From Macrostomum lignano (Eukaryota), in contig NIVC01000921.1 in assembly GCA_002269645.1 (NCBI GenBank), positions 186,001 to 250,000 on the forward strand: 64,000 nt of DNA, in the 5' to 3' direction. Positions 10,444 to 64,000 of this stretch are shown here, one piece after another. Under the pieces are notes generated by a model. That model was not told the DNA's origin and made no database searches. It saw nothing but the letters and a program-made list of their open reading frames with translations. Each line of letters opens with the position of its first letter. The stretch's first letter is position 1. Made by a program: the position numbers and the translations under genes.

Positions 10444-10496
<53 letters not shown>

Positions 10497-10635: not shown

Positions 10636-10676
<41 letters not shown>

Positions 10677-10707
10677 CTAAGACAGACAGACAGACAGGCA
10701 GACAGGC

Positions 10708-10756
<49 letters not shown>

Positions 10757-10759
10757 CTA

Positions 10760-10799
<40 letters not shown>

Positions 10800-10839
10800 G
10801 GAAAGACAGACACTAAGACAGACAGACAGACAGACACTA

Positions 10840-10880
<41 letters not shown>

Positions 10881-10920
10881 GGCAGACAGACAGACAGACA
10901 GACAGACAGGCAGACACTAG

Positions 10921-10988
<68 letters not shown>

Positions 10989-11061
10989 CTAAGAGACAGA
11001 CAGACACTAAGACAGACAGACAGACAGACAGACAGGCAGACAGACAGACAGACAGACAGGC

Positions 11062-11110
<49 letters not shown>

Positions 11111-11113
11111 GGC

Positions 11114-11146
<33 letters not shown>

Positions 11147-11149
11147 CTA

Positions 11150-11182
<33 letters not shown>

Positions 11183-11185
11183 GGC

Positions 11186-11254
<69 letters not shown>

Positions 11255-11265
11255 GGCAGACACTA

Positions 11266-11306
<41 letters not shown>

Positions 11307-11387
11307 CTAAGAGACAGACAGACACTAAGAGACAGACAGACACTAAGACAGACAGACAGACAGACAGACAGGAAGACAGACAGACAT

Positions 11388-11422
<35 letters not shown>

Positions 11423-11451
11423 CTAAGAGACAGACAGACAGACAGACACTA

Positions 11452-11510
<59 letters not shown>

Positions 11511-11513
11511 CTA

Positions 11514-11564
<51 letters not shown>

Positions 11565-11567
11565 CTA

Positions 11568-11610
<43 letters not shown>

Positions 11611-11636
11611 CTAAGAGACAGACAGACAGACACACA
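10362..11636. repeat. (GACA)n microsatellite with interspersed CTAA/GGCA variants
   Basis: Direct inspection; source of the RQTD/LSVC ORFs. Confidence 0.98.
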
Positions 11637-11787
11637 GGTATTTCAGCGCCTGCTTCAAGCCTCGGATCGCCGTGTTCCTACGAGTAAATTAGCAATCTAG
11701 AGTTGGCATTTCGAGCCCCAGCAGAGCAGGCAGTCAGCCGAATCCGAGATAGGCGCGATCAAAAACAGCAAAACAAAGGAAGTAAAA

Positions 11788-29177: not shown

Positions 29178-32256
<3,079 letters not shown>

Positions 32257-37000: not shown

Positions 37001-40000
37001 TGATGATTTCTGTGGTGATTTCCTTGTGATGATTTCTGTGGTAATTTCCTTGTGATGATTTCTGTGGTGATTTCCTTGTGATGATTTCTGTGGTGATTTC
37101 CTTTTGATGATTTCTGTGGTAATTTCCTTGTGATGATTTCCTTGTGATGATTTCTGTGGTGATTTCCTTGTGATGATTTCTGTAGTGATTTCTTGTGATG
37201 ATTTCTGTGGTGACTTCCTTGTGATGATTTCTGTGGTGATTTCCTTGTGATGATTTCTGTGGTGATTTCCTTTTGATGATTTCTGTGGTAATTTCCTTGT
37301 GATGATTTCCTTGTGATGATTTCTGTGGTGACTTCCTTGTGATGATTTCTGTGGTGATTTCCTTGTGATTATTTCTGTGGTGATTTCCTTTTGATGATTT
37401 CTGTGGTAATTTCCTTGTGATGATTTTCTTGTGATGATTTCTGTGGTGATTTCCTTGTGATGATTTCTGTGGTAATTTCCTTTTGATGATTTCTGTGGTG
37501 ATTTCCTTGTGACGATTTTTGGTCATTTCCTTGTGATGATTTCTGTGGTGATTTCCTTGTGATGATTTCTGTGGTGATTTCCTTGTGATGATTTCTGTGG
37601 TAATTTCCTTGTGATGATTTCTGTAGTGATTTCCTTGTGACGATTTTTGGTCATTTCCTTGTGATGATTTCTGTGGTGATTTCCTTTTGATGATTTCTGT
37701 GGTGATTTCCTTGTGATGATTTCCTTGTGATGATTTCTGTGGTGATTTCCTTTTGATGATTTCTGTGGTAATTTCCTTGTGATGATTTCCTTGTGACGAT
37801 TTTTGGTCATTTCCTTGTGATGATTTCTTTTTGATGATTTCCTTGTGATGATTTCTGTGGTGATTTCCTTGTGATGATTTCTTTTTGATGATTTCCTTGT
37901 GATGATTTCTGTGGTAATTTCCTTGTGATGATATCTGTAGTGATTTCCTTGTGACGAATTTTGTGGTGATTTCCTTGAGATTATTTTCTATTTTTCTTGA
38001 TGACTTTTCTGTGGTGATTTTTCTGTGATAATTTTATTTTGGTGATTTCCTTTGGGGATTATCCTGCGACGATTTCTGGCTCGGAGTAATGCAGATTTTT
38101 TGTTTTGTTTTAATTTCTATTTTGACCATCAACGATTGATTGCCATGAAGATAAACTCAGCTCACCCAGACTCCAGGCAAAGTAGTAGCGCTGACGAATG
38201 ACAAAGCAGGCCAAAGTCATGTAGAACCACTTGCTAATCAGTGAATAGGACTGGAATCCGTCCTCTGTAAAATTAACGTAATAAAAATTCATAAATAGCA
38301 ATCAGTCAGTTAATATAAGGGGCCGGGCTGTGAGCGCTGCCGCAAATCAATGCAACTGTCGAACAGCAGCCAGCGAGCAGACGAGCACGCAATACGTACG
38401 CAGACACACGCTCACACAAGGTGTTCAGCGGCCGTGAGTACCTCATTGCCAGGTAGTGTTGCACACTGTAACTTTGGGTATCCCCAACCTTCACCATCCC
38501 CAACCTTCACCATCCCCAACCTTCACAATCCCCAACCTTCACAATCCCCAACCTTCACAATCCCCACCCTTCACAATCCCCAACCTTCACAATCCCAACC
38601 TTCACAATCCCCAACCTTCACAATCCCCAACCTTCACCATCCCCAACCTTCACCATCCCCAACCTTCACAATCCCCAACCTTCACAATCCCCACCCTTCA
38701 CAATCCCCACCCTTCACAATCCCAACCTTCACAATCCCCAACCTTCACAATCCCCAACCTTCACCATCCCCAACCTTCACCATCCCCAACCTTCACCATC
38801 CCCAACTTCACAATCCCCATCCTTCACAATCCCCAAACTTCACCATCTCTAACTTCACCATCCCTAAGTAGAATAGCTAGGACAGTGCAAGTTTTATTAC
38901 CGGCTAAAAAGTTCAACGGAAACACGGTCTGCATAGTGAGGGTGACGAGTGCAAAGAATAGTGTCCACTTGGCTACCACTAGTATGCGAGAGGTGCCGCG
39001 AAGGTAGTGTTCGCGCTGCTCCTTCTGCAAATTGAAAGGCAAAAGTACATATATACTTAGCTGGCTGTAAATAGTTGCTATGGAGGTAATAGCTGATTTG
39101 GTAGTTATGCTATATTTACCACGGGTCAATTAAGATTCTAAGATGGTGATGCAGTTGTCTTGAGCAATATAGTGGCTAATAAAATTAGTAGTGACAGTTG
39201 CTGTGGAGTGATATAGTTGTTATGAGGATGCCATTGCCATGATGTGATTTTTTTGAGATAATGCCGTTTGCAATGAGGATAATTTCGTTGCTAGGATGAT
39301 GCCGTTGCTATGATGATGACGCCGTTGCTATGAGGATGATGTTGTTGCTATGAGAATAATGCCGTTGCTATGAGGATAAAACCGTTACTATGATGATGAT
39401 GCCGTTGCTACGAGGATGATTTTGTTGCTAGGCTGATGCCGTTGCTATGAGGATGATACCGTTGCTATGAGGATGATGTCGTTGCTATGAGAATGATTTT
39501 GTTGCTAATCATTTTGTTGCTAATGCTACTGCTGGTATCACACGTGTTCCAACTGGTCCAAGTCGGATAGCCTACCGTCAAATCCGATGGCATCGGTATG
39601 GTACCGTCCATGTAGTTCCTGAAGTCGACGTAGAACACAAACGGGCCAACTAATATGCCTTGAAAGTGCACCAGATAGGTGTAGTACTGCAGCAGGCTTG
39701 GGAAGTCCCTGATCGCGAGTCCATGACGCAAAGGGGGGGGGCAATATGAGCACAACAGAAATTAGTAGCGGCATGAATAATAATAAATTAATTCGCACCT
39801 GACAAAGTGCTGCATCTGCCTTTCGGTCAAATTCGGCTTAACTTTCTCGCTGCTCTTATCCGACTCCTGCTGCTCCGTTTGATCGTCCGTTTTCTTTTTT
39901 CGATCAGCCTCTTCCATTGCCTTCACCACGATGCCGTCGTGAATATTGAAAGCCAGGGTTGACAGTCGCTGGGTGGAGATCATCAGCGGCCTGGGGTTTC

Positions 40001-49224: not shown

Positions 49225-50440
49225 CACCATTTTACCTCCTATTTTGAACAAAGTCTTGTTCAGAAGAAACAAGCAGAACTTCAATTCAAACACTTTAAAA
49301 AATAACAGCCTTTGTGGAACTTCAATTCAAACAATTAAAGTCCCTTTCTATTGAAACAGAAGAACTTCAAATATTCAGACTGTCTGTGGCCCAAATTGTC
49401 CCAGAATGACGCGCATGCGCAGATTTGAAATTCAAAAGAAACAAAGTCACATTCTATTTCGACAGAGATTTTTGCACATACATTTAGATACGAAAGTACA
49501 TTTTTAGTACATTAATCTATTTTTTTGTTTTTCCTGTACTGCATAACTGTACAATCGTTGCGCAATAAGAAACGATATGAATGCTGAAGATCAGATTGAA
49601 GAAGACGATCAATTGCTGGAAGAAGGGGGAATCGGTGAATTTAAAGCAGAATTCGATGAAGATATCATGGAACAGCAGCCTCGGCAGTACGCAATTGTAA
49701 GCAACAGTGACAGAGACCGTATCATCAGGGCTGCTGATCGTAGATGACTTTGTGGAACTGGCGCGCCAACTTGGAGTCAAGAGGTCAACAGCGTACACGA
49801 TTGTGAGGTCAGGGAGAGCGGAAAAGCAGCCTACGAGATTCCGGACTCCATTCAGGTCAAGCGGCTTCCACCATTTTGACTCCTGTGGAGAACTTAATCT
49901 CCTGTTGGAAGGCCGCTCTGAAGAGAGCAGACCAGCAAAATTTTATCGCTCCGATAGTTGAGTAGCACCGCAATCAGTCGATGGCGGCCTATCGGCGAGA
50001 CATTCTGTACAGCATGGTGGACAGAACCATTGGCTGCATCTCTGTGAACAAATGCATTGAGTGGTTCAACCATGTGTTTACATGCTTCGCTCGCTGCCTT
50101 GGCAACTGATGGTCAGGTGTCTCAAGTTGGCCAACTGACACTGTCTTATTCCTGTTTTTCATTTTACTCTTATGTTCGTCGATATGTTGTATTTTATCCC
50201 TTTGTCGAAATAGAATGTGACTTTGTTTCTTTTGAATTTTAAATCTGCGCATGCGCGTAATTCGGGGACAATTTTGGCCACAGACAGTCTGAATTGAATT
50301 TCTTCTGTTTCAATAGAAAGGGACTTTGTTTGAATTGAAGTTCCGCAAGCGCTAATGTTTCTTAAAGTGTTTGAACTGAAGTTCTGCTTGTTTCTTTTGA
50401 ACAAGACTTTGTTCAAAATACCATAGGAGGTAAAATGGTG
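49225..50440 (+). mobile_element. Internally deleted Tc1/mariner (IS630-like) element with ~245-bp TIRs
   Basis: TA-flanked long inverted repeats 49225-49470 / 50195-50440. Internal frameshifted HTH (SNSDRDRIIRAA..DDFVELARQLGVKRSTAYTIVR) and C-terminal CIEWFNHVFTCFARCL; DDE core missing. Confidence 0.85.
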
Positions 50441-51108
50441 TAGAAGCCATGTAAGCAAAATGGAGCTACTATCTCACATAAAAATTTATGTTTAACAAGT
50501 ATCTATGGTATAAATTATATTAATTTTCTAATAAGCATTAAACATCAAAAGTAAAACAAATTATGTATTTGCGTTTAAAATATACACGTAATAAAATTAT
50601 ATAACCATGAGGTATTTCCATGTACATGTATGAATAATTTATCTCTCAATTTATAAGCTATTTTCATATCATTAGTAAATTAAGATCGTATAATGACTAA
50701 CGATCCTACGACTAACGAACTAACGATAGTTTAACGAAATGGTGATTACAAATAGGTCCTATAAGAAAACGAATCAAGCTAACCTTATCGTTTAAGTAGT
50801 ACACACAGGAAGCAAACATGAAAAACAGCACATTTACATGTACAGAGAGAACATGGTTTATTGCAGAGAATCTAAACAAGTAATAGTGCTATTATAGCAT
50901 GCAAAACAATGGACACAATACTGTAAATACTGTGTACCAAAAGTATACAAATATTGAATACAAATATTCAACTACAATACTGAAACAATATTTATTCAAT
51001 CTATGCAATATGTCACTACTTGTATTTTCACGCTGAAATGACTGTCCCAGTCTTAAAGCGACTTAGTAAAAGTGGAGTACAGGAGGATATCAATGCCCCA
51101 CAGCGAGT

Positions 51109-51528
51109 TCACTGTTCATTAGCCTTCTCTGTTTCCATGGGAACGTCCTTCAGCTGCGGCTGCTCCCGAGCTGCCGGAGCCTCGAACGGCGCCTCGATGC
51201 ACAGTCGGCCATCGTGGCTGAGCTTGCTCACAACCTGGTCCAGCTTGGTGCCGTCGGGCAGCTGGTAGATTCGCTCCAGCCGCTTGTGGACCCGCTGCCC
51301 GCCGGCCTCCTCCTTGTGCTCCGCCTCCACCAGAACGCAGTCGCCCTGCTGTCGCACGCGAATCTCGTCCGGCTTGAACTCGCGCACCGACAGCTCCGCC
51401 TTGAACCGCTTGCTGCCATCGTCCGCCTCCACCAGCTGGCCGGACCCCTCAGACTGCAGGTCGCCTCGCAGCAGGCCGCGCAGCTCGTCCCACACGGAGT
51501 CGCCCTGCGGTTTCTGCTGCTGCTGCTG
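51109..51528 (-). CDS. Small heat-shock protein, 3' half (second alpha-crystallin domain), separated from its 5' half by the LINE
   Basis: QQQQQKPQGDSVWDELR...KRFKAELSVREFKPDEIRVR...VLVEAEH...LERIYQLPDG..LDQVVSKLSHDGRLCIEAP, stop at 51109; AATAAA on - near 50856-50861. Confidence 0.9.
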   Translation of the reverse strand, partial: QQQQQKPQGDSVWDELRGLLRGDLQSEGSGQLVEADDGSKRFKAELSVREFKPDEIRVRQQGDCVLVEAEHKEEAGGQRVHKRLERIYQLPDGTKLDQVVSKLSHDGRLCIEAPFEAPAAREQPQLKDVPMETEKANEQ

Positions 51529-54500
51529 CTGTTGTTGTTGTTGTTGTTAGTTGGCCCAAACGCGCCCAGGATCCATGCAGAACCTGGCCAGCGCGACCAA
51601 ACCATCAGGGTAATCGGACAAGTTGCTGAGGGAGAGCGGAGCTCCAATGAAGCGACGGCGGGCGGCCTCGAGAGCAGGGCACGCTGTCCAGTGCTCAAGG
51701 GTGTCTGGTTCGAGGAAGCACCTTTGGCACGTCGGATCCACCGTGGGGTCCATGAGGGCGCGGAAGGCTCCGAAGAGGCTGGAGTGGCCGGAGCGCAGCC
51801 GGGCAAGAAGGACAGCGTCTTTGCGGTTAGTAATAAGCCGACGTTCCTTTTCGGCGTCGGCGGAGGCATAGGTGAGACGAGATCTCGCGTGGGTGACCGG
51901 CTTGTCAACCAGAGTGCGGCGGATCACCGAGGCGGCAGTGGGAAAACTGATGCTGGGGCGCGGTGCTTCATCGGCGTTGGCGGCAGCGGAGTTAGCAGCG
52001 CGGTCCGCGAGTTCATTGCCCGGAATGCCGACATGACCCGGGACCCACAGGAGAGCGCGGCAGTTGTGCGGGAAGCGGAGGGAAGAGGCCAGGCGGCTGA
52101 AGGGACGCTGAAGGGCGCGCAGAAGAGACTGACTGTCAGAGCAGATGATGGCAGGGCGCGTGGGGTGCGAGCGGAGGTAGTCGAGGGCTAGGACCAGAGC
52201 GCGGAGTTCCTCTTCAAAGGAGCTGGTGTAGCGGCTGCCAGCGGACGTGCGGGCTTCCACGGTCGTCGGGACTGCCGGGTCTCCGATGGTGACCACAGCG
52301 GCCGCCCCGCCAGCCTCGGAGCCGCCGGCCGCCGAACCATCGCAGTAAATGACGAGCTCAGCCGGGTGAGACCGGATGACGTCGAGAGCGGCAAGACAGC
52401 GCTCCAACGGGGGCGTGGTGGCCGGAGGCAAAGGATTGTCAGCTAGGATCGCCGGAAGATGTTGGTCCAGCCAGGGGCATGGGAAGGCCGGTGTGAGCGG
52501 CAGACGCGGCGTGAGATCAATGCCAAGGCCATTGGCAAGCTGAGCCGAGCGGAGTCTCCAGCTACTGCGGGCGAGCCGGTGTTGCACGGTGCCCGAGAGG
52601 GCGATGGCGCGAGGATGGTCGTTGGGCAGCCTGAGCGCGCGTTCCCTGGCGATGAGGCAAAGGCGGTCGCTGGTGTTCCTGTAGCTGCCGATGCCGGCCT
52701 CCAGGTGCACAGCGTCAAGCGGCGCCGAGCGGTGCAAGCCCGTGACGATTCTGAGGGCCTGGTTTTGCGCGCGCTCAAGGCGCTCGAAGGAGGTGCTGGA
52801 AAGCCAAGGTTGCCAAGCCGGGGCCGCGTAGTTAAGAAGGCTCTGCTGCATAGCCAGGTAGACGCCGCGAAGGCGCTCCTTGCGCCAACCCCAGTCCCGA
52901 GCCGCGAGGCAGGACAGCATGCGGCAGCGGGACAGGACTCTGCTGCAGATGTCGTTGACGTGCGCGTTAAAGCTGAGCGTACGGTCCAGGGTAATGCCTA
53001 GGAGTCTAGGAGTGCTGCAGTGCCGAACTTGGGAATGCCCGATGAAGAGCGAGGGGCTCCAGCTCGCTTCGCTGGGGTCGGTAGAAAAGAAGGCGATTTC
53101 ACTCTTGTCAGCGTTGAGCACCATCTTGTTGGAGGAGCTCCAGGCGGTAACAGCGTTGAGGGCGGCCTGAAGGCGGGAGGCGGCCGTGAGCTTGTTGCGG
53201 TGCCTGCATCTGAGAGAGATGTCGTCAGCGTATAACGTGATGCCAACATCCTCAGGGATAACGGAGACGACAGGGTCAATGAAAAGCGTGAATAGCAGCG
53301 GTCCCAAGACGGATCCCTGCGGAAGGCCTTGGCGCATCGGCTTGGACTTGCTGAGGGACCCGTTGAAGGAAACCCGAGCGCGGCGGTCGCTGAGGAAGGA
53401 CGAAATCCAGCGAATGTAAGCAAGCGGGACACCTTTATCAGCGAGGATGGTGATAAGCTTCTCGCGCCACACTTTGTCGAACGCCTTAGAGTAGTCCAGG
53501 AGGGCGAGAATGGTCCTTTCGGCCGGTTTGAGTTGGAAGCCGTCGCTAATGTCCTGCACAACTCTGAGTAACAGGTCCTCGCACGAGTACATCGCACGGA
53601 AGCCAGCCTGGGCCGGCGAGATCCAGCCACGAGAGTTGGCGAGGTGTCTCAGTCTGGTGTCGATGATTCGCTCCAGAAGTTTAACGGCACAGGAGGTGAG
53701 GCTCACTGGGCGGAAACTGGAGATCTCTCTGGCCGACTTGCCGGCTTTAAGAAGCGGGATGATAATGGCGCAACGCCAGATGTGGCCCAGGGATCCGGTG
53801 TGCAGCGACATGTTGAAGATAAACAGCAACTCTAAGAGGGCTGCGTCCCCCAGGTGTTGCAACATGCGCGGGGAAATGTCGTCCGGGCCGGCGGCGCCGT
53901 TAGTCTTCTGATGAGCAATCGCTCCGCGAAGCTCCTCCATGGTGATGGGTGGGGTCTCCGCGGTAGCCGGCGCGTTGCTCCGCAGAATGGCTTTGGCGCG
54001 CCTGACGACCGCCCGGTCGTCACTGTCGATCTTGAGGCGACAGACAGAAGCATAGTGGCTGGCGAAGGCGTTGGCTTTGCTGCGGTTGTCAGTGAGAGAG
54101 CGTTCACCCACGAGCAGAGCCTCGTTGGGCGCGGAGGAGCCCGGGGAGCCGCTGAGGGACCTGATCAGTTTCCACGCCTGGCTCGAATCATGGCTGTGGT
54201 GCAGGTCGGCGAGGTATTCCTTCCAGGCAGAGTCTTTGGCGTCGCGGGTGAGCCGGGAAGCTTCGATGCAAGCGTCGAGCCACTCTTGACGCCTATGATG
54301 CACTTCGTGCCGGAGGCGGTTGCGGCGCTTGATGGCAGCTTTAGCTTCTTGGGTAAGCCAGGGCTTGGATTGTCTCTTAAGCCGGATTTTGCCTATGTGT
54401 TTGTGCGCCTGCTCCAGGATGATCTGATTGAAGCGAAGGATGCGTTTGTGAACCGACAGGCGGGACTTAGGGAGGTTGCGGAAGGCTTCCTCGGTGGCGG

Positions 54501-56196
54501 CGCTGAAGCCCTGCCAGTCGGCGCCCTTCTTGCGCCAAACCATGCGGCCAGGAGCCTTGTGCTGGATGGTAGCCGTGTGGAACCGGACGATGATAGGCAA
54601 GTGATCCGCCCCGAGATCTTCATCGACGCTCCAGTCGGCCTTCTCAGCCCAGCCCGGCGGGGCAGCCGTGACATCCGGGGTGCTGAGGCCTGCAGTGGCT
54701 CTGTTCACCCGGGTGTGGGAACCATCATTCAGAAAGCACATGTTGTGGGAAGTGCTCCAGTCCACGAGGGAGTCGCCACGCGCGTCGGGCGGTTGGGAGC
54801 CATCCCACAGCGGAGAGTGCGCGTTGACGTCTCCAAAAACTATCGTGTTGCTGTCGGTTGGGACGCAGTTCCATTCCGAAGCGGGAACAGGGTCTTCGCA
54901 AGAGCGAAGCGGCGCCGCATACAGGTTAACAGCTCTGAGCCAGGAGCGCTTGGAGATTTGGATGTCAACCTGTAGGACCTCAACCGGGGCCGAGTAGGTG
55001 TACGGTCCGCGACGAAAGCAGAGGTGCTCGTTGATGAGGAAGAGGAGACCGCCTCCAGACTGAGTCCCTGGCCTGTCCGCTCTGACTTGGGAGTAGCCGG
55101 GGGTCGACGGGAGCTGAATTCTGGAGTTGAGTTTCGTCTCCTGGATGACAGCGACGTCAATGTGGAGCTCTTTAAGTCTGTCCATGAGCTCACTGAGTTT
55201 GGGACATAGCCCGTCGGCGTTCCATTGCAGAAAGCGAATGCTGCTAGCCGAGGGAAGCGTAGAGGAGCAGACCGTGAGGGCAGTGGAGCGTACACGAGAA
55301 GACGCGGAGTGATCTCCAAGGTGACGGATCGACTGGCTGGAAGTGCCCGCGGGGGAGCAGGATTTGCAGAGCCAGGCTCCCCGGAGAGCTGAGTTGGCGC
55401 CTTCGCGCGTGAGGCCAGAGCAGCTCTTGTGGCTAGTGCCGCCGCAGACGGAGCAGGTGAGGCGAGGGGCGCCCTGACGAATGCTGGTGCCGCACTTGGA
55501 GCAGGTGGTGCGGGCGAGGGGGCGCAGTTCGTGGGGCCTGGCCGGATGGCGACCGGCAATTGAGCGCTGAGGGGCTGGACAATGCGCCTGGCAGGTCCAA
55601 GCAGGGGCGCCGAGATAACGAGAGAGGCCACTGCAATTGCGAGAACGGTGCACAAGGAGTGGGCAGTCGCTGTGGGAGCATCTGAGCGGAGCAGTGCCGG
55701 AACGAATGCGTGTGCCGCAAGCCGCGCAGAAGTCGATCGTTGGCGCTTGCGCAGAGCCGGGGGCGGGGGCCGGGGCGGCCGGGAGGGCCTGCCCGCGGAC
55801 GCGCCCCGCGGGGGCAGCGCTGTGCCTGGGGCACAGCCAGATACGCGCGGGGTCAGCCAGCTGGAGCCGCGAGAGACCGCTGCAGCGCGACTGTAGATGG
55901 CAACGCTCAGCGCAAGAGGCAGCGGCACATTGCGGAGAGTTGGTGGTGCGAATCGCTTTGGAGCAGGTCGTGCAGATGGGGCCCGGATTGAGTTCGACGC
56001 AGCCCAGCAGAAGAAGAAGCAGCACGAGCAGAGGAGCAACTTGAGCGATCACCGACCTGGCAGAGCCGAGGGCTCTAGCCAGGTGATAGTGAGGTGACCT
56101 ATGGAAAGGGGGTTTGGCGCTACGTCCGGGTCGCCGCGAAGAGGCACCCCCCATGACCGCGCCAGGAGGCGCTCGACTCCTATGGGAATCAACGGG
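51529..56196 (-). mobile_element. Apparently full-length, intact LINE (I-group, Ingi-like): single ORF with 2A-like motif, 3 PHD-like fingers, APE, RT, RNase H, C-terminal Cys/His motif
   Basis: No stop from 56196 to 51547. APE: FLQWNADGL, IQETKL, GDVNAH, DHLPI. RT: FRPVSLTS..VKLLER, QAGFR, LLDYSKAFD, GLPQGSVLGP, YADD. RNase H: IYCDGS, EELRAL, SDSQS, LWVPGHVGIPGNELAD. CQRC...EHWTAC. 3' (CAA)5 tail; (CAG)5 target duplication at 56197-56211 and 51514-51528. Confidence 0.95.
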
Positions 56197-56592
56197 CTGC
56201 TGCTGCTGCTGCTCCTGCTGCTCCTTGAACGGCGCCTGCAGCACCAGCATGCCGTCCCGGGTGAAGCCGCTGTTCAGCTTCTCTGCGTCCACTTCCTCCG
56301 GCAGCTCCACCGTCCGCTTCACCTCCGTCACGTCCTCGCCGTTCTCCAGCCGCGCCACCACCCGCACCTTCCGCTCCTCCCGCTTCACCGACACGTCCTT
56401 CGGCGAGAAGCCGCGAAGGTCCACAGTCCGGCTCCACTGACGCGGTCGCCTCGGACCTCTGTGCCGCAGCAGCTGCACCAGCGGGTCATACTCCGGCGTC
56501 AGCCAGTCGTCCAGCTCGCTCATGGCTGCCACGAGCGGCAGAGAGTGCGAGAACGGCGTGTACACGTTGCTCGGTGCGATCCACAGAGACAT
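51547..56592 (-). CDS. Chimeric 1681-aa ORF: sHSP first alpha-crystallin domain fused in frame to the LINE polyprotein
   Basis: First ATG downstream of the TATA box is at 56592 (MSLWIAP...); the frame is open to TAA at 51547. The GTG start at 56760 in the ORF track lies in the promoter. Confidence 0.8.
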   Translation of the reverse strand: MSLWIAPSNVYTPFSHSLPLVAAMSELDDWLTPEYDPLVQLLRHRGPRRPRQWSRTVDLRGFSPKDVSVKREERKVRVVARLENGEDVTEVKRTVELPEEVDAEKLNSGFTRDGMLVLQAPFKEQQEQQQQQPVDSHRSRAPPGAVMGGASSRRPGRSAKPPFHRSPHYHLARALGSARSVIAQVAPLLVLLLLLLGCVELNPGPICTTCSKAIRTTNSPQCAAASCAERCHLQSRCSGLSRLQLADPARIWLCPRHSAAPAGRVRGQALPAAPAPAPGSAQAPTIDFCAACGTRIRSGTAPLRCSHSDCPLLVHRSRNCSGLSRYLGAPAWTCQAHCPAPQRSIAGRHPARPHELRPLARTTCSKCGTSIRQGAPRLTCSVCGGTSHKSCSGLTREGANSALRGAWLCKSCSPAGTSSQSIRHLGDHSASSRVRSTALTVCSSTLPSASSIRFLQWNADGLCPKLSELMDRLKELHIDVAVIQETKLNSRIQLPSTPGYSQVRADRPGTQSGGGLLFLINEHLCFRRGPYTYSAPVEVLQVDIQISKRSWLRAVNLYAAPLRSCEDPVPASEWNCVPTDSNTIVFGDVNAHSPLWDGSQPPDARGDSLVDWSTSHNMCFLNDGSHTRVNRATAGLSTPDVTAAPPGWAEKADWSVDEDLGADHLPIIVRFHTATIQHKAPGRMVWRKKGADWQGFSAATEEAFRNLPKSRLSVHKRILRFNQIILEQAHKHIGKIRLKRQSKPWLTQEAKAAIKRRNRLRHEVHHRRQEWLDACIEASRLTRDAKDSAWKEYLADLHHSHDSSQAWKLIRSLSGSPGSSAPNEALLVGERSLTDNRSKANAFASHYASVCRLKIDSDDRAVVRRAKAILRSNAPATAETPPITMEELRGAIAHQKTNGAAGPDDISPRMLQHLGDAALLELLFIFNMSLHTGSLGHIWRCAIIIPLLKAGKSAREISSFRPVSLTSCAVKLLERIIDTRLRHLANSRGWISPAQAGFRAMYSCEDLLLRVVQDISDGFQLKPAERTILALLDYSKAFDKVWREKLITILADKGVPLAYIRWISSFLSDRRARVSFNGSLSKSKPMRQGLPQGSVLGPLLFTLFIDPVVSVIPEDVGITLYADDISLRCRHRNKLTAASRLQAALNAVTAWSSSNKMVLNADKSEIAFFSTDPSEASWSPSLFIGHSQVRHCSTPRLLGITLDRTLSFNAHVNDICSRVLSRCRMLSCLAARDWGWRKERLRGVYLAMQQSLLNYAAPAWQPWLSSTSFERLERAQNQALRIVTGLHRSAPLDAVHLEAGIGSYRNTSDRLCLIARERALRLPNDHPRAIALSGTVQHRLARSSWRLRSAQLANGLGIDLTPRLPLTPAFPCPWLDQHLPAILADNPLPPATTPPLERCLAALDVIRSHPAELVIYCDGSAAGGSEAGGAAAVVTIGDPAVPTTVEARTSAGSRYTSSFEEELRALVLALDYLRSHPTRPAIICSDSQSLLRALQRPFSRLASSLRFPHNCRALLWVPGHVGIPGNELADRAANSAAANADEAPRPSISFPTAASVIRRTLVDKPVTHARSRLTYASADAEKERRLITNRKDAVLLARLRSGHSSLFGAFRALMDPTVDPTCQRCFLEPDTLEHWTACPALEAARRRFIGAPLSLSNLSDYPDGLVALARFCMDPGRVWAN
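56197..56592 (-). CDS. Small heat-shock protein, 5' half (first alpha-crystallin domain)
   Basis: WSRTVDLRGFSPKDVSVK...KVRVVAR...EVKRTVELPEEVDAEKLNSGFTRDGMLVLQAP (HSP20 signature DGxLxxxAP), then a poly-Q linker. Confidence 0.92.
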
Positions 56593-56713
56593 GCTTGCTG
56601 TGTCGCTTGTAAATGATAGAGTTTGGCGATTGATTCGCTTTGCTTGAGATTGCTTTGCTTGCGGTTGCTTTGTGTGCTCGAATCCTGCCTCACTCTCGGA
56701 TCCAGCTGTCTCG

Positions 56714-56785
56714 CTTTTATAGACTGGCACTGAGGAAGCTTCTCGAATTTTCTTGCCCACTGACTCATTCTGGAAATTTCTAGAA
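56714..56785 (-). promoter_or_regulatory. Heat-shock promoter: TATA box + two 4-unit HSEs + AP-1-like site
   Basis: TATAAAA at 56721-56715 (-); GAAgcTTCtcGAAttTTC at 56735-56752; TTCtgGAAatTTCtaGAA at 56768-56785; TGACTCA at 56761-56767. Confidence 0.9.
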
Positions 56786-58324
56786 ATCGAGCCGCCTACC
56801 CAAATTTAGACAGCAAAATGTTCATATTTCTACTGCTAGTGAAAAAACGTGTACAAAAATATATACTTTATACTATTTGTAAGTTTGATTTTTAACCTCC
56901 CGATGAAACTAAAATTATGTATGTATTATCTTTCAAACATAGCAAGTTTAAACAAAATAGCAAAAAGTGAAACCATAAGTATAGTCAGCTATAACAATAT
57001 TTTCGGCTGTTTAAATCCCTAAAGCTGTTTATTTTCAATAATATCATCATAATTAAACTTAATTTGTCTTACACATACAATTCAAAGCCTTTAACTAGCC
57101 AAACAGAGCACTACGGACGCACAATTAAAGCATGGGCAGCTTTGCTATTAAGTCACTAAACATGAATGCTGGTAGCAAGGACTTAAAGTTACCGTAAGCT
57201 CACTATAGTTAAAAAGCTCGAGCCAGAAGTAAAACTATGTACAAAAAATGACATCAGCTGCCAGGAGTTTTGGAATTTTGCGAGCGTTTAGCTTATGTGT
57301 TTTTCCATGGATAAATTTATAGGTTTCTCTGAGATGCGGCGATGGGAGCTTAGGGCCCTCCTAGATCAGGATGCAGAATCCGCATTAGAGATGCGCAGGC
57401 AAGTTAATTGTCATTAACAGGCAAAGAGAGGGGTGGGGAGTTATCTAAGCTGAGAATAAATTGATAAACGAATAACAGGATGCCAGACGGAACCTATTGC
57501 GGGCTGGTATAGTGTACTATGTAGTAATGACCAATGCCGCACAAGCAGACTCAAAAAAGCAGTAATTGGAATTACGGTTTAAAATAGCTTACTGCAGAAG
57601 GCGAATTACAATACAAAGACGCCATTAAAGTGATTATTGACGATGCAAACCAAATTTCTGTTAAGACGTTTGAGAGGGGTTTGCAATTGTCTGACAATTC
57701 GATGGGGCTTATTTAAAAAAGCAGTTGGTTACTTACGACAGGAAATTACGTAGTTTACTATACAAATAGAAACTGTTAGAAGATGATATATGTTACAGAT
57801 TGACTGGGCAAAACTTTATGATATCCTTATGAGTCCTTGCTCCATGGATGGCAAGCAAAATCCCTATGGCTATGTGAACATTCGAGAAGAAAACAATGAA
57901 CTTCTAAAACCTGTCACTGTAGCTCTCTAAATACTATCTATATGAGATATATCCAGAATTATAGTCAATTATAGTGCAATATCCAAAGGTCAGTAGCCTT
58001 TGACGTAGTTATTGGTAACACATCAAAGCTGTTTGAGTTTTACAAAAATGCCCCCCCCTCAATGTCGCTTGAATTTGGAATTCTATGAAAACCGATAGAA
58101 ACGCACAGCAAGCTTGCTAATTGTCTGCATCAGTACTCCGTAAAGCCCATTAACTACTTGTACGATTGCATCCTAAAACCAAGAGCTGGCAAAGATTGCT
58201 CCAAGATACACTTACTTATGTTAAAGCTTTAAGCTGTTGTTGGTATTTTGCAATTCTAAGAATCTAAAATTTTAAACTGCGTGAGTCAAGTCAGCCGCAT
58301 ATATTTCGAACTCGGCGCTGCATC

Positions 58325-60644: not shown

Positions 60645-61225
60645 CAAGTTACCCTTGGATTCGGATTAGTTAACCTTTGGATTCGGACGAGTTAACCTTT
60701 GGATTCGGACGAGTTAACCTTTGGATTCGGACGAGTTAACCTTTGGATTCGGACGAGTTACCCTTGAATTCGGATTAGTTACCCTTGGATTCGGATTAGT
60801 TACCCTTGGATTCGGACGAGTTACCCTTGAATTCGGATTAGTTACCCTTGAATTCGGATTAGTTACCCTTGAATTCGGATTAGTTACCCTTGGATTCGGA
60901 TTATATAGTTACCCTTGGATTCGGATTATATAGTTACCCTTGGATTCGGACGAGTTACCCTTGAATTCGGATTAGTTACCCTTGAATTCGGATTAGTTAC
61001 CCTTGAATTCGGATTAGTTACCCTTGAATTCGGATTAGTTACCCTTGAATTCGGATTAGTTACCCTTGAATTCGGATTAGTTACCCTTGGATTCGGACGA
61101 GTTACCCTTGGATTCGGATTAGTTACCCTTGGATTCGGAAGAGTTAACCTTGGATTCGGATTAGTTACCCTTGAATTCGGATTAGTTACCCTTGGATTCT
61201 GATTATATAGTTACCCTCGGGTTCG
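60645..61225. repeat. ~21-bp minisatellite (GTTACCCTTGGATTCGGATTA)n
   Basis: Direct inspection. Confidence 0.95.
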
Positions 61226-62909
61226 GACGAGTTTCAATTTGGTTTCACGTTGTTTCACCCGTTTTGGGGATGTTGGGATATATTTAGATAGGCTTTATCA
61301 TGATTTTTATTTTCCTGAATTCAGGATCATTGTTCATGAGTTTCTACAATTTCTCTTCAAATCGAAATCTTCAGGAAGAAAACAAACAAACTTTCTGGCG
61401 TATATTTTAATAAAGCCGAAAGTTTTGTTACTCGAAAAACTGCCATTATGCTACTTTCCATTAGTATTCGGTCTTTATTTTCGGTACAGCCCCTGGTAAT
61501 ACTAGAATTTGCTCGAAGCAGCAAAAAAGTTTCAGGATTAAGTGCCTGTTGTGTGAGCGAGTGACCAAGTCCTAATCCGTTAGGGCTTGGAGTAAACCCC
61601 GTTGACTCAGCATAGCTCCCTCACGTGACTCACCCCCTGTTCTGCCTCTGTCTAGCGCTCTCCCGGGCAAGCCCAGCTCAGGCCCTAGCGACAATGCAAA
61701 AAAGCAAAGCCAAAGCCGCATCCCTGTAAACTGGGAAGCCTCCCAGCCTCCTTCCTATCTCTTTGCCTGGGTCTCCTCCCCACTGCCTTTCTTCTCTTGG
61801 CTCCCTCCCATTCCTCCTTGCTGTGTTTTTCTTCCTCCCATCGCTCGCGCGCGGGGCGCGGAGCGGAGGAAATGGGGGGAAGGCGGCGGGGGGAGGGTTG
61901 CGGTCGGGCAAGCAACTCCGCGGCGATGCGTTTTTTACGAGATGAAGAAGAGGAGAGGCTGGGCCTGGGAGAGAGATAGGATTTGCAGGGGTCGGGAACA
62001 GTGCTGGGGATCTGAGTCACGATTGCTGAGCAGTCCAGGCAGTAGAGGGAGGGGAATTGAAAGAAGCTCCGTCTTCTCCTTCTTTTTCCGCTCCGTCTTC
62101 CTAGTCGTCATCCGCTTTTATCTTCTTGGCTATCGCCTGTTCTCTGATTGCATTTTCTGCCGAGCCGCTCCCAGGGCAAGAGAGAATAAAGAAGGCGACC
62201 CCCCTGAAGCCCTCTGGCGCGCCCGACTCTTCGATCTTGAGGGAGCAGTTTTGACTTTTTTTACTTGAGCAGCGAGCCCGACTCTTTTTACTTCGAAGCT
62301 TCGAGGGCGATTAGATGGAGAGAGAGAGAGAGAGAGAGAGAGAAATGAGGGGCGGGACAGAAAGATGGAGAGTTGAGATGCTGAGGCTGGATGAGGCCTG
62401 GGTGAAAGCTTTGTTTAGGTTTGAGCTTATTCGACCCCCCCACCCAACCCAATCGCCGTCCCAAATCCCACAGGCCTAATCGCGGATAACGGTTGCCAAG
62501 AGGTTTCCGGTTGCTGGGATCGAATCGGGGATTTGGATGAGGAAGTGACTGAGAGCGGCAGCGCTGAGATGGAGAAATCTGGCGCCAGTCCCACAGGGTG
62601 AGCCTGCTCAAGCGTGAGACAGACGTCACGTGCTGCGGCGGGATGGTTCGAATTTTCTGAGCATTGTCCCGAATCGAGCATGCAGCATGCAGCTCGGAGC
62701 AGCAAGGTCTCTGAACCGGCGCAAAGTCTCAGAATTCGCTGTTGGGTTGGTCGGATTATATCTCGGCTCGTTCCTTGCTGCTCAAGTGAGCACATCATAA
62801 AAGAGTCAATCTTTAAAGAGAGCTCATATATCCTCTATTTTGTGACTCCTAAAACTCAGTTAGGACAAAATGGATGACGAATAGTTTAGGCGTTATAGAA
62901 CTTATTGTC

Positions 62910-64000
62910 TGTGAAGTTTAGGATTTGTGAAGTTTAGGATTTGTGAAGTTTAGGATTTGTGAAGTTTAGGGTCTGTGAAGTTTGGGGTCTATGAAGTTTG
63001 GGGTGTGTGAAGTTTAGGGTCTTGAAGTTTGGGGTGTGTGAAGTTTAGGGTCTTGAAGTTTGGGGTGTGTTAAGTTTAGGGTTTGTGAAGTTTAGGGTCT
63101 GTGAAGTTTGGGGTGTGTGAAGTTTAGGGTCTGTGAAGTTTGGGGTCTATGAAGTTTGGGGTGTGTGAAGTTTAGGGTCTTGAAGTTTGGGGTGTGTGAA
63201 GTTTAGGGTCTTGAAGTTTGGGGTGTGTGAAGTTTAGGGTTTGTGAAGTTTAGGGTCTATGAAGTTTGGGGTTTGTGAAGTTTAGGGTCTTGAAGTTTGG
63301 GGTGTGTTAAGTTTAGGGTTTGTGAAGTTTAGGGTCTGTGAAGTTTGGGGTGTGTGAAGTTTAGGGTTTGTGAAGTTTAGGGTCTATGAAGTTTGAGGTG
63401 TGTGAAGTTTAGGGTCTTGAAGTTTGGGGTGTGTGAAGTTTAGGGTCTGTGAAGTTTGGGGTGTGTGAAGTTTAGGGTCTGTGAAGTTTGGGGTGTGTGA
63501 AGTTTAGGGTCTGTGAAGTTTAGGGTTTGTGAAGTTTAGGGTCTGTGAAGTTTAGCATTTGTGAAGTTTAAGGTTTGTGAAGTTTAGGGTTTGTGAGGTT
63601 TAGGGTTTTTTTATTTTTTTTTTTAGAGGCAGGGGGGTTGTGTGCACCCTGGCGCAATTTAAGCGATATTGGCACACAACCGGCGAGAGGCATTACTGCC
63701 CATTCCGCCGACTCCCCTGAGCAGGCATACAAGCGCGCGGATACGTACGCAGGCACACACTCACACAGGAGTGTACAGCGGCCCTAACTTTATTTTATCG
63801 TTAGGCATGTACACTTTACTGCGCCTTGGGGGGTTGGCTCTCAAGGCCGTTAATTGCACGAGCAGAGCCAAGCCGAGATTCCAAATCAGCCCCAAATTAA
63901 TGTGACTGCACTTGGAATCGAGCCTGGGTCGCTGGCACACCAGAGCAGCTGCGCTACCGCTGGGCTACGGCCCCCCTCTGAGGTTTAGGGTTTGTGAAGT
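62910..64000. repeat. ~19-bp minisatellite (TGTGAAGTTTAGGGTC/T)n, interrupted by a SINE
   Basis: Array 62910-63608, resumes at 63979. Confidence 0.93.
63609..63978 (-). mobile_element. tRNA-derived SINE with poly(A) tail and TSD
   Basis: On -: A-box TAGCCCAGCGG, B-box GGCTCGATTCC, 3' A-rich tail; 15-bp TSD TGAGGTTTAGGGTTT at 63594-63608 and 63979-63993. Confidence 0.88.

What the first reader, a model, noticed from the sequence alone, without database searches (positions are those of the whole stretch)
51109..56785. Heat-shock promoter driving an in-frame small-HSP / intact LINE fusion (candidate stress-inducible retrotransposon cassette)
Seen: TATA plus two perfect 4-unit HSEs; ATG at 56592; an alpha-crystallin domain; then, with no stop, the whole LINE ORF (PHD-APE-RT-RNase H). 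The second alpha-crystallin domain follows the element. Known: HSF binds inverted nGAAn arrays, flatworm p40/Tsp36-type sHSPs have two alpha-crystallin domains, and sHSP genes are strongly induced. Inference: heat shock would produce an mRNA carrying the complete retrotransposon and translate its enzymes as an sHSP fusion (or as a 2A-released protein), coupling mobilisation to stress. The alternative is a chance recent insertion that knocks out one sHSP copy; in-frame orientation has a prior near 1/6, so frame alone does not prove selection.
Basis: partly seen in the sequence, partly recalled or inferred. Interest (0 to 1): 0.9.

Follow-up and report, generated by a model that had tools for sequence, protein, structure and literature searches.

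The report
CAG-repeat-seeking LINE inside flatworm hsp20 gene
An intact jumping gene (a LINE retrotransposon) sits in frame inside the glutamine-repeat linker of a Macrostomum heat-shock gene; this looks like a recent, repeat-guided insertion that broke the gene and could make this LINE copy heat-inducible, with no sign that it is a selected stress cassette.

Summary
On the minus strand there are two perfect 4-unit HSEs and a TATA box. They are followed by the ATG at 56592, alpha-crystallin domain 1, and then, with no stop, an intact 1549-codon LINE (three PHD-like fingers, APE, RT, RNase H, CCHC). A (CAA)5 tail, (CAG)6 and alpha-crystallin domain 2 come next.

The host gene is the counterpart of Mlig-hsp20, the experimentally heat-inducible Macrostomum lignano gene. 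Orthologs in M. lignano (three loci) and in another Macrostomum-like sample are uninterrupted and keep the HSE/TATA layout and the polyQ linker.

The only close relative of the LINE (49% identity, M. lignano) has the same termini: (CAG)5|CCCG... at the 5' end and (CAA)5(CAG)5 at the 3' end. More distant relatives also end in (CAA)n. The element therefore seeks CAG/CAA runs in a fixed orientation, and its ORF runs open to the 5' junction in the CAG=Gln frame. Orientation and frame follow from that, so the "1 in 6" prior does not apply.

The 2A-like motif of this copy (GCVELNPGP) lacks the conserved Asp, so self-release is doubtful. Nothing points to selection of a cassette. Heat-driven chimeric transcription is plausible but untested.

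The parts
56768..56785 (-). Distal heat-shock element, four perfect inverted nGAAn units (TTCtaGAAatTTCcaGAA)
   Evidence: Only match in the window, 0.00 expected from shuffles. An equivalent array lies upstream of the orthologs.
56735..56752 (-). Proximal heat-shock element, four perfect units (GAAaaTTCgaGAAgcTTC)
   Evidence: Only match in the window, 0.01 expected. Orthologs carry a 3-unit array at the same place.
56714..56721 (-). TATA box TATAAAAG, about 120 nt upstream of the ATG
   Evidence: Read from the sequence. TATAAAAG in L001 and TATTTAAG in M. lignano align at this position.
56197..56592 (-). sHSP 5' part: ATG, N-terminal arm, alpha-crystallin domain 1, and the start of the polyQ linker ending in (CAG)5 (56211-56197), which is the upstream target copy
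   Evidence: Pfam HSP20. 88% nucleotide identity to L001 and 74% to Mlig-hsp20. Protein alignment.
51532..56196 (-). Complete LINE insertion, 4665 nt (3 x 1555), with a single ORF open from its first base to TAA at 51549-51547
   Evidence: Closest protein among 1.8 billion representatives is M. lignano P0003 at 52%.
56159..56192 (-). Two 5'-terminal RNA hairpins (element nt 5-24 and 25-38)
   Evidence: 13 base pairs, 5 of them with compensatory double changes between the window and the M. lignano copy. No Rfam ribozyme match.
56152..56154 (-). The LINE's own ATG (gcggtcATGg), 14 codons after the 5' junction
   Evidence: Sequence. The M. lignano copy has AAA at this position.
55978..56037 (-). 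Hydrophobic leader plus 2A-like motif APLLVLLLLLLGCVELNPGP (Cys in place of the conserved Asp)
   Evidence: Relatives read GD[VI]ExNPGP.
55357..55974 (-). Three PHD-like C4HC3 zinc fingers (55974-55822, 55728-55579, 55503-55357)
   Evidence: Pattern scan. Weak Pfam PHD/C1 hits. Conserved CxxC..HxxC..WxC columns in the family alignment.
54589..55230 (-). APE-type endonuclease domain
   Evidence: Pfam PF03372/PF14529.
53020..53724 (-). Reverse transcriptase domain (YADD at 53232-53221)
   Evidence: Pfam RVT_1, E 5e-34. YADD located.
51982..52359 (-). RNase H domain
   Evidence: Pfam RNase_H, E 2.5e-10.
51670..51729 (-). C-terminal CCHC motif CQRCFLEPDTLEHWTACPAL
   Evidence: Pattern. Conserved in the relatives' C-termini.
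51532..51546 (-). (CAA)5 3' tail of the LINE, directly after the stop codon
   Evidence: (CAA)n tails also occur in L009, L027, L029, L031 and L032.
51514..51531 (-). (CAG)6, the downstream copy of the target (TSD-like), in the Gln frame of domain 2
51109..51513 (-). sHSP 3' part: rest of the linker, alpha-crystallin domain 2 (about 51417-51157), and the stop codon
   Evidence: Pfam HSP20, E 2e-14. 84% nucleotide identity to L001. dN/dS 0.26, no sign of decay.
50857..50996 (-). Two AATAAA poly(A) signals of the sHSP 3' UTR (50996-50991 and 50862-50857)

Best explanation
Summary: a young, intact, single-ORF APE-type LINE has inserted by target-primed reverse transcription into the short CAG run that encodes the polyglutamine linker of a two-domain small heat-shock gene. 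That gene is the counterpart of Mlig-hsp20 in a Macrostomum flatworm.

Shown:
- The host gene is uninterrupted in relatives.
- The insertion is flanked by CAG runs on both sides and ends in a (CAA)5 tail.
- The only close relative of the element, in M. lignano, has identical terminal anatomy.
- More distant relatives share the (CAA)n tail.
- The element's ORF is open up to its first base in the CAG=Gln frame.

Inferred:
- The nicked (CTG)n bottom strand primes on the CAA/CAG 3' end of the LINE RNA. This fixes both the target (CAG/CAA runs) and the orientation.
- Landing in a sense-strand polyQ tract therefore yields an in-frame fusion automatically.

Consequences (inferred):
- This hsp20 copy is truncated after domain 1.
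- Heat shock probably produces a chimeric hsp20-LINE-hsp20 transcript that ends at the hsp20 poly(A) site.
- That transcript could be translated from the hsp20 ATG into a domain-1/LINE fusion. Release at this copy's degenerate 2A would be poor.
- Heat-inducibility of this one copy would be a by-product of where it landed. Nothing indicates that it was selected for.
For: 1. Empty sites. P0001 (84% identity, 276 aa, five Logan contigs) and P0002 (Mlig005128g1, 72%, three M. lignano loci) are continuous two-domain sHSPs with a polyQ exactly at the insertion point. Their linker DNA is (CAG)n with some CAA.
2. TPRT hallmarks. (CAG)5 lies upstream, and (CAA)5 plus (CAG)6 lie downstream. (CAG)5 or longer runs cover only about 0.1% of the rest of the window.
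3. Independent copy. In L009/L026 the junctions read (CAG)5|CCCGATCAGCCCCATAGG at the 5' end and (CAA)5(CAG)5 at the 3' end, in the same frame.
4. Family-wide tail. (CAA)n tails occur in L027, L029, L031 and L032 (L030: (CCA)5 CAG(CAA)3). L029 is inserted into a sibling copy's (CAA)6 tail. L031 and L032 are two different sites of one family.
5. Young age. The LINE ORF is intact. dN/dS of domain 2 (0.26) is about the same as domain 1 (0.20) against L001.
6. Native, conserved promoter. The HSE/TATA layout is shared with the orthologs. Mlig-hsp20 is experimentally heat-inducible (PMC6371448) and the published primers map to L006-8.
7. No poly(A) signal in the LINE sense strand.
8. The reconstructed sHSP best matches Tsp36 (2BOL) across both domains.
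Against: - Only two copies with CAG-run flanks could be examined, and no genome-wide census was possible.
- In M. lignano the element sits inside another LINE, not inside a cellular gene, and the frame relation there is ambiguous.
- Some relatives (L031, L032) have flanks without CAG, so the specificity may be loose and driven by microhomology.
- Transcription, translation and population frequency of the window allele are all untested.
- An assembly mis-join through CAG repeats cannot be formally excluded without reads.
Confidence: 0.7

Rival explanations
1. Specialised polyQ parasite. The Macrostomum lineage of this LINE has evolved to colonise CAG-coded polyglutamine tracts in sense and in frame. 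It borrows the host promoter and start codon and sheds the host peptide with its N-terminal 2A. On this reading the hsp20 insertion is a working, heat-inducible source copy.
For: - The ORF is open to the 5' junction in the Gln frame in both CAG-flanked copies.
- The M. lignano copy has no ATG between the junction and a perfect GDIETNPGP.
- ATG-less open leaders of about 80-115 codons precede the 2A in L009, L029, L030 and L031.
- The LINE has no poly(A) signal of its own.
- 2A is near-universal at the N-terminus of the family.
- The papers on 2A in LINEs that I checked do not mention a host-fusion role.
Against: - The window copy has its own ATG in good context (56154).
- Its 2A has Cys at the essential Asp position.
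- Many relatives start with their own Met shortly before the 2A.
- In L029 and L030 the flanking CAA run is read as ACA (Thr) in the ORF frame, so being in frame with Gln is not general across the clade.
- Conservation upstream of the ATG is explained at least partly by two RNA hairpins with 5 compensatory pairs.
- The M. lignano copy lies in another LINE, with a TAG four codons upstream in the Gln frame.
Confidence: 0.15
2. Selected stress-inducible cassette. The hsp20-LINE arrangement is maintained because it couples retrotransposition or a host function to heat shock.
For: - The promoter, the fusion frame and the LINE ORF are all intact.
- LTR retrotransposons of M. lignano are known to use HSEs for heat activation (PMC12801592). 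Heat-coupled transposon expression therefore occurs in this genus.
Against: - Orthologs in two other genomes are uninterrupted.
- No second example of this LINE in an hsp gene was found.
- Frame and orientation are explained by the insertion mechanism.
- The sHSP loses domain 2.
- Both halves show equal purifying-selection signatures, which indicates a very recent event. A long-maintained arrangement would show relaxed constraint on the cut-off domain 2.
Confidence: 0.07
3. Autonomous expression, or RNA processing. The LINE is expressed from its own 5' end, through an internal promoter or through cleavage at the structured 5' terminus. In that case the in-frame fusion is never translated as such, and the hsp20 context matters at most for transcription.
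For: - The 5' ends of the two copies are identical (CCCG...) despite different upstream sequence.
- Two hairpins supported by compensatory changes sit at the very 5' end.
- The element has its own ATG 42 nt from the 5' end.
- Precedents: L1Tc Pr77 is an internal promoter in the first 77 bp (PMC1874656 abstract). R2 5' ribozymes are a further precedent (my own knowledge).
Against: - There is no Rfam ribozyme hit on the element.
- The two-hairpin layout is not the HDV-like nested fold.
- The M. lignano, L029, L030 and L031 copies lack an ATG upstream of the 2A.
Confidence: 0.3
4. Assembly artefact. A LINE copy has been mis-joined into the hsp20 gene through shared CAG repeats.
For: Both junctions lie in simple CAG repeats. 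Such repeats could in principle confuse an assembler.
Against: - The shared repeat is only 15-18 nt.
- An artefact would need two precise mis-joins that insert exactly one complete element between two halves of one gene.
- The same anatomy is seen in an independent assembly of another species.
Confidence: 0.03

Closest known systems
Microsatellite-targeting APE-type LINEs: Waldo (ACAY)n, Mino (AC)n, Kibi (TC)n, Koshi (TTC)n, Dong (TAA)n (review PMC3812793; Kojima & Fujiwara 2003/2004 as cited there)
   Same: Both show insertion inside a simple repeat, a fixed orientation relative to the repeat, a repeat-like 3' tail, and precise junctions.
   Different: - The target here is a CAG (CAG/CAA) trinucleotide run, which is not on that list.
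- CAG runs are typically coding (polyQ), so insertions hit genes instead of harmless repeats.
- Specificity rests on only two CAG-flanked copies plus the tail data from relatives.
Single-ORF LINEs with an N-terminal 2A peptide: L1Tc/ingi in trypanosomes, and Rex1, L2, CR1 and Ingi-clade elements of marine invertebrates (Odon et al. 2013, PMC3708506; PMC3894237)
   Same: - No ORF1.
- A 2A motif within the first 100 or so residues, upstream of APE-RT.
- A hydrophobic stretch before the motif.
- APE-RT-RNase H order, as in ingi/L1Tc.
   Different: - Three PHD-like fingers lie between the 2A and the APE domain.
- The tail is (CAA)n.
- Many copies have no ATG upstream of the 2A.
- The window copy has Cys in place of the conserved Asp.
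- Clade membership by RT phylogeny was not determined.
ingi/RIME insertions in RHS (retrotransposon hot spot) genes of Trypanosoma (PMC7563717, citing Bringaud et al. 2002)
   Same: A 2A-bearing LINE inserted at a defined site within a protein-coding gene. The result is a gene split into two halves that flank the element.
   Different: - RHS is a large multigene family with a recurrent hot spot, and more than 50% of its members are hit.
- Here only one insertion in one heat-shock gene is known.
- The site is defined by a trinucleotide repeat, whereas the RHS hot spot is a fixed site in the 5' coding region.
Heat-activated retrotransposons: M. lignano LTR retrotransposons with HSEs in their LTRs (PMC12801592); ONSEN in Arabidopsis (my own knowledge)
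   Same: A retroelement placed under HSF/HSE control in the same genus.
   Different: Those elements carry HSEs within their own LTRs, as a heritable family trait. Here the HSEs belong to the host gene, and only this one copy would be affected.
Tsp36 / p40-type flatworm small heat-shock proteins with two alpha-crystallin domains (PDB 2BOL), and Mlig-hsp20 (PMC6371448)
   Same: - Two HSP20 domains in one chain.
- The best solved-structure match is 2BOL across both domains.
- The gene is the ortholog or a close paralog of the characterised heat-inducible Mlig-hsp20.
   Different: The window allele is interrupted between the two domains by 4.7 kb of LINE. At best it encodes domain 1 only.

Membership tests
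Two-domain small HSP (Tsp36/p40 type; Mlig-hsp20 orthogroup) | Two HSP20/alpha-crystallin domains in one reading frame | tested here: met
   Pfam HSP20 hits in both halves. The halves join into a 267-aa protein that aligns end to end with P0001 and P0002.
Two-domain small HSP (Tsp36/p40 type; Mlig-hsp20 orthogroup) | Closest solved structure is Tsp36, matched across both domains | tested here: met
   2bol_A, E 2.4e-13, query 59-243 against chain 120-312.
Two-domain small HSP (Tsp36/p40 type; Mlig-hsp20 orthogroup) | Heat-inducible expression | not testable with these tools
   Shown only for the M. lignano ortholog (more than 100-fold at 35 C; PMC6371448). The published primers map to L006-8.
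HSF-dependent heat-shock promoter | At least three contiguous inverted nGAAn units close to a TATA box | tested here: met
   Two perfect 4-unit arrays, each unique in the window. The TATA box lies 14 nt downstream of the proximal array.
HSF-dependent heat-shock promoter | Promoter layout conserved in orthologs | tested here: met
   4-unit plus 3-unit HSEs and a TATA box in L001 and L006-8.
APE-type non-LTR retrotransposon (LINE) | APE endonuclease plus RT (YxDD) in one ORF; here also RNase H and a C-terminal CCHC | tested here: met
   Pfam. YADD and CCHC located.
APE-type non-LTR retrotransposon (LINE) | Target-site duplication and a 3' tail | tested here: met
   (CAG)5 and (CAG)6 flanks with a (CAA)5 tail. 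The pre-insertion state is inferred from the orthologs.
APE-type non-LTR retrotransposon (LINE) | Clade assignment by RT phylogeny (I, Ingi, Nimb and so on) | not tested
   No reference LINE set was available. Only the domain order (APE-RT-RNase H-CCHC) is known.
2A-bearing single-ORF LINEs (Odon et al. 2013) | [quoted passage not shown] | tested here: inconclusive
   The window copy reads GCVELNPGP, with Cys for Asp. About two dozen relatives read GD[VI]ExNPGP. Substitutions at this Asp abolish activity in F2A/P2A.
2A-bearing single-ORF LINEs (Odon et al. 2013) | No ORF1 | tested here: met
   The element begins 42 nt before its ATG, directly after the sHSP sequence. There is no room for an ORF1.
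2A-bearing single-ORF LINEs (Odon et al. 2013) | StopGo (ribosome-skipping) activity | not testable with these tools
   Needs a translation reporter assay.
Sequence-specific (microsatellite-targeting) LINEs | Independent copies flanked by the same repeat, in the same orientation, with identical junctions | tested here: met
   The window and L009 both read (CAG)5|CCCG... and (CAA)5(CAG)5-6. This rests on only two copies.
Sequence-specific (microsatellite-targeting) LINEs | Majority of genomic copies at the target repeat | not testable with these tools
   No searchable Macrostomum genome was available. DNA-pattern scans of the available collections gave only bacterial chance hits. The covariance model of the 5' end found no further copy in 200 kb.
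Co-transcribed LINEs with a 5' self-cleaving ribozyme (R2-like strategy) | HDV-like or other ribozyme at the 5' end | tested here: inconclusive
   No Rfam ribozyme match on the element strand. However, two conserved 5' hairpins with 5 compensatory pairs are present. Their fold is not the HDV-like nested pseudoknot.

The most novel reading that the evidence does not exclude
A flatworm LINE lineage is specialised for CAG-coded polyglutamine tracts. Repeat-guided TPRT places it in the sense orientation, and because the target is a triplet repeat, always in the Gln frame. It can then be transcribed from the host promoter and translated from the host start codon. Its N-terminal 2A frees it from the host peptide. 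The hsp20 insertion would then be a naturally heat-inducible source copy.
Probability: 0.15. Interest if true: 0.85.

Novelty: new variant of a known kind. Interest (0 to 1): 0.55.

Why it matters
- Target choice. If the CAG/CAA-run targeting holds genome-wide, this would be a microsatellite-specific LINE whose preferred target is usually coding sequence (polyQ). Other site-specific LINEs are thought to target multicopy or non-essential repeats, which limits harm to the host, so this would run against that pattern.
- Role of the 2A. It gives a concrete, testable rationale for the N-terminal 2A peptides of single-ORF LINEs, and for the ATG-less open leaders seen in several relatives.
- Experimental handle. 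The allele in the window places a complete LINE behind the counterpart of the best-characterised heat-inducible promoter in Macrostomum. This is a natural experiment for heat-triggered LINE expression in a genus where transgenesis and heat-shock reporters already exist (shown for M. lignano).
- Host gene. The allele is most likely a simple loss of domain 2 of one hsp20 copy.

Tried and rejected
1. Other copies in the window. tblastn of the LINE and both sHSP halves found no other copy.
2. DNA-pattern scans. The conserved 5' motif TGCCTCNTCGCGGCGACCCGG was scanned against metagenome contigs and genome contigs.
3. More M. lignano copies. A third homolog search, with P0003 as query, gave only the messy model P0030, which has a Q9 run right after the LINE C-terminus.
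4. Representative search over 1.8 billion proteins. Nothing came closer than P0003 at 52%.
5. Rfam on 50800-57000, both strands. There was no ribozyme or other credible hit on the element.
6. Covariance model of the 5' hairpins. Searched over about 200 kb (the window plus 12 loci), it recovered only the two training copies.
7. LINE removed as an intron. The best candidate sites (CCC|GTTGAT ... CAACAG|CAG) are a poor donor and an acceptor without a pyrimidine tract. I rejected this as unlikely; it was not tested.
8. Stop-codon read-through into domain 2. The insert is 3 x 1555 nt, so only the TAA separates the LINE ORF from domain 2. In L009 the insert length is not a multiple of 3, so I treat this as coincidence.
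9. 'In frame with Gln' as a clade-wide rule. Rejected, because L029 and L030 read the flanking CAA run as Thr.
10. Clean in-frame host fusion in M. lignano. Not confirmed. The surrounding sequence is another LINE: a gag-like ORF1 with three CCHC knuckles upstream and APE-RT downstream. There is also a frame discrepancy and a TAG.

Full report
**1. The observation**

On the minus strand a single open frame runs from 56760 to the TAA at 51549-51547 (1737 codons). The first ATG that fits the orthologs is at 56592.

Pfam finds these domains, in order:
- HSP20 (aa 107-190)
- APE endonuclease (511-724)
- RVT_1 (1013-1247, E 5e-34)
- RNase H (1468-1593)
- only weak PHD/C1 hits

A pattern scan finds three C4HC3 PHD-like fingers and a C-terminal CCHC. 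A second HSP20 domain (E 2e-14) lies in the ORF 51495-51109.

Upstream are TTCtaGAAatTTCcaGAA (56785-56768) and GAAaaTTCgaGAAgcTTC (56752-56735). Each is the only match to its pattern in 64 kb, with 0.00-0.01 expected from shuffles. TATAAAAG follows at 56721-56714. The one adjustment is that the element ends at 51532, not 51529.

**2. The host gene**

Joining the two halves gives a 267-aa two-domain sHSP. Its relatives are:
- P0001, 84% identical, 276 aa, on five Logan contigs
- P0002, 72% identical, 296 aa, 'BOX15_Mlig005128g1' of Macrostomum lignano, on three contigs

Both relatives are uninterrupted and have a polyQ exactly where the LINE sits. Their linker DNA is a short CAG run with occasional CAA. 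The best solved structure is Tsp36 (2BOL), matched across both domains.

Mlig005128 is 'Mlig-hsp20'. It is induced more than 100-fold at 35 C, and its promoter drives the hsp20::mScarlet heat sensor (PMC6371448). The published promoter and qPCR primers map onto L006-L008.

The promoter layout is conserved in L001 and in M. lignano: a 4-unit HSE, a second HSE and a TATA box. The heat-shock promoter therefore belongs to the sHSP gene, and heat-inducibility of the window locus is a strong inference. The window comes from a Macrostomum species or paralog distinct from the M. lignano reference, with 74-81% nucleotide identity in the coding sequence.

**3. The insertion**

The 5' junction reads ...GAG(CAG)5|CCCGTTGATTCCCATAGG. 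The 3' end reads ...GCCAAC TAA (CAA)5 (CAG)6 AAACCG....

- The element is 4665 nt long and has no AATAAA/ATTAAA on its sense strand. The sHSP 3' UTR has AATAAA at 50996 and 50862.
- Apart from the two LINE flanks, the window has only two other (CAG)5-or-longer loci, about 0.1% of the sequence.
- dN/dS against L001 is 0.20 for domain 1 and 0.26 for domain 2. Domain 2 shows no sign of decay since being cut off, and the LINE ORF is intact. The insertion is therefore young.

**4. Relatives of the LINE**

The closest protein in 5.8 billion clustered sequences, and also in 1.8 billion representatives, is M. lignano P0003 at 49-52% identity. Its locus (L009/L026) has the same termini:
- 5' end: CGG(CAG)5|CCCGATCAGCCCCATAGG...
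- 3' end: stop, 26 nt, then (CAA)5(CAG)5
- the ORF is open up to the junction in the CAG=Gln frame

Two copies from two species both lie in CAG runs, in the same orientation, with the same terminal sequence. That cannot be chance; by rough estimate, two random hits in 0.1% of sequence have a probability of about 1e-6.

More distant relatives (37-46% identity, unknown invertebrate sources) show the following:
- L027 ends in (CAA)5.
- L029 ends in (CAA)9 or more, and its 5' flank is the (CAA)6 tail of an upstream sibling copy, giving a head-to-tail tandem.
- L030 ends in (CCA)5CAG(CAA)3.
- L031 and L032 are two sites of one family, ending in (CAA)3-4 and (CAA)7CAG, followed by unrelated flanks.
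- L010 and L011 have A-rich tails.

I conclude that (CAA)n is the element's tail and that CAG/CAA runs are the preferred landing sites, at least in Macrostomum. Under target-primed reverse transcription (established mechanism), a nicked (CTG)n bottom strand can pair with a CAA/CAG 3' end of the RNA. This would fix both site and orientation, but it is inference.

The known microsatellite-targeting APE LINEs use ACAY, AC, TC, TTC and TAA (PMC3812793). CAG is not among them. TG, tRNA and rDNA targets are listed for other clades (PMC4640811).

**5. Frame**

In both CAG-flanked copies the ORF continues to the first base of the element as CAG CAG|CCC. Any insertion into a sense-strand, CAG-coded polyQ tract is therefore in frame.

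**6. The 2A and the start codon**

Nearly all relatives with a complete N-terminus carry GD(V/I)ExNPGP within the first 20-120 residues. This matches what is known for single-ORF LINEs (PMC3708506).

The window copy reads GCVELNPGP, with Cys for Asp. No substitution at that Asp kept high StopGo activity in F2A/P2A scans, and D12A abolishes it (bioRxiv 10.64898/2026.09.24.754024). Release of the LINE protein from an sHSP fusion is therefore doubtful for this copy.

The window element has its own ATG (56154, context gcggtcATGg) 14 codons after the junction. By contrast, the M. lignano copy, L029, L030 and L031 have open leaders of about 80-115 codons upstream of the 2A that contain no ATG. This unexplained feature keeps alive the idea that such elements are translated from upstream, host-derived start codons, or by non-AUG initiation.

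Several facts argue against a general 'polyQ fusion' design:
- Many relatives begin with their own Met.
- L029 and L030 read the flanking CAA run as Thr.
- The M. lignano copy is nested in another LINE, with a gag-like ORF1 carrying three CCHC knuckles upstream and APE-RT downstream. The frame relation there is ambiguous, and a TAG lies four codons upstream.

**7. A structured 5' end**

The first 106 nt are 78% identical between the two copies. The proteins as a whole are only 49% identical.

RNAalifold predicts two hairpins at element nt 5-24 and 25-38. Of their 13 pairs, 5 show compensatory double changes. This explains much of the apparent 'coding' conservation upstream of the ATG, and it points to an RNA-level function such as 5'-end definition, promoter activity, processing or translation.

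Rfam finds no ribozyme. A covariance model of the hairpins finds no further copy in about 200 kb. The 3' end also carries a conserved CCTGGGCGCGT block. It is coding in the window and untranslated in M. lignano.

**8. Synthesis**

The best-supported reading is a recent, repeat-guided LINE insertion that split an hsp20 gene. The conserved heat-shock promoter very probably drives a chimeric transcript through the element to the hsp20 poly(A) site.

Three things remain untested: whether that RNA is translated into active LINE protein, whether it is processed at the 5' hairpins, and whether it is used as a retrotransposition template. Nothing indicates that the arrangement is selected.

The wider interest lies in the element family. 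It combines (CAA)n tails, CAG/CAA-run targeting, an N-terminal 2A, ATG-less leaders and a structured 5' terminus.

Noticed in passing
window 234-1504, 2275-3599, 4027-5204, 6883-9468, 10353-11637, 12290-13510, 30182-30850, 34200-35416, 36205-37986, 60647-61205, 62907-63606: The window is packed with long, well-conserved minisatellite arrays (units of 15-45 nt, 25-130 copies) and tetranucleotide runs such as (CAGA)n, (ATCT)n, (ATCA)n and (GACA)n. No other obvious protein-coding gene was seen outside the hsp20/LINE locus.
   Followed up: no
window 11974-11988 and 29796-29831 (+ strand): Two other (CAG)n runs, of 5 and 12 units, are unoccupied by the LINE. They are potential empty target sites.
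   Followed up: no
window 49240-49467 and 50200-50420: A pair of terminal inverted repeats of about 230 nt (91-95% complementary) encloses about 730 nt, roughly 700 nt downstream of the hsp20 3' end. An ORF between the arms (49707-49961) has a helix-turn-helix-like stretch, so this looks like a small DNA-transposon remnant. The arms are 71-75% identical to L008 19267-19422, about 8 kb downstream of Mlig-hsp20.
   Followed up: partly
window 51532-56196: The insert length is exactly 3 x 1555 nt. The LINE ORF, its TAA and alpha-crystallin domain 2 are therefore all in one frame, with the single stop codon as the only barrier. In L009 the insert is not a multiple of 3, so this is probably coincidence.
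   Followed up: partly
window 51550-51575; L009 7395-7415: A conserved 3'-terminal block CCTGGGCGCGT lies 8-10 nt before the (CAA)n tail. It is coding in the window copy and lies in the 3' UTR of the M. lignano copy. This suggests an RNA signal for reverse-transcription initiation.
   Followed up: partly
L026 7433-9738 and 14479-17500: The M. lignano relative of the LINE is nested inside a different two-ORF LINE. A gag-like ORF1 with three CCHC knuckles lies upstream and APE+RT lies downstream. The CAG run it hit lies at the ORF1/ORF2 boundary region of that host element.
   Followed up: partly
L029 1-240: Head-to-tail tandem of two related LINEs. The downstream copy starts right after the (CAA)6 tail of the upstream copy, and its ORF is in the same frame as the upstream ORF. 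The two ORFs are separated by one TAG.
   Followed up: partly
L009 2722-3000; L029 235-608; L030 68-643; L031 57-1388: In these copies the long ORF stays open to an upstream stop (L029, L030, L031) or to the 5' junction (L009). The roughly 80-115 codons before the conserved 2A contain no ATG. How the leader and 2A are translated is unexplained.
   Followed up: partly
window 51112-51531 and 56197-56592 versus flanks: The hsp20 coding sequence is as GC-rich (66-67%) as the LINE (63%), while the adjacent non-coding DNA is 32-38% GC. High GC here marks coding sequence in general, so it is no sign that the LINE is foreign.
   Followed up: yes
L006 14693-15574: An unrelated LINE-like fragment (23% identity to the window LINE, APE/RT region) lies about 4 kb downstream of Mlig-hsp20 in M. 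lignano.
   Followed up: no
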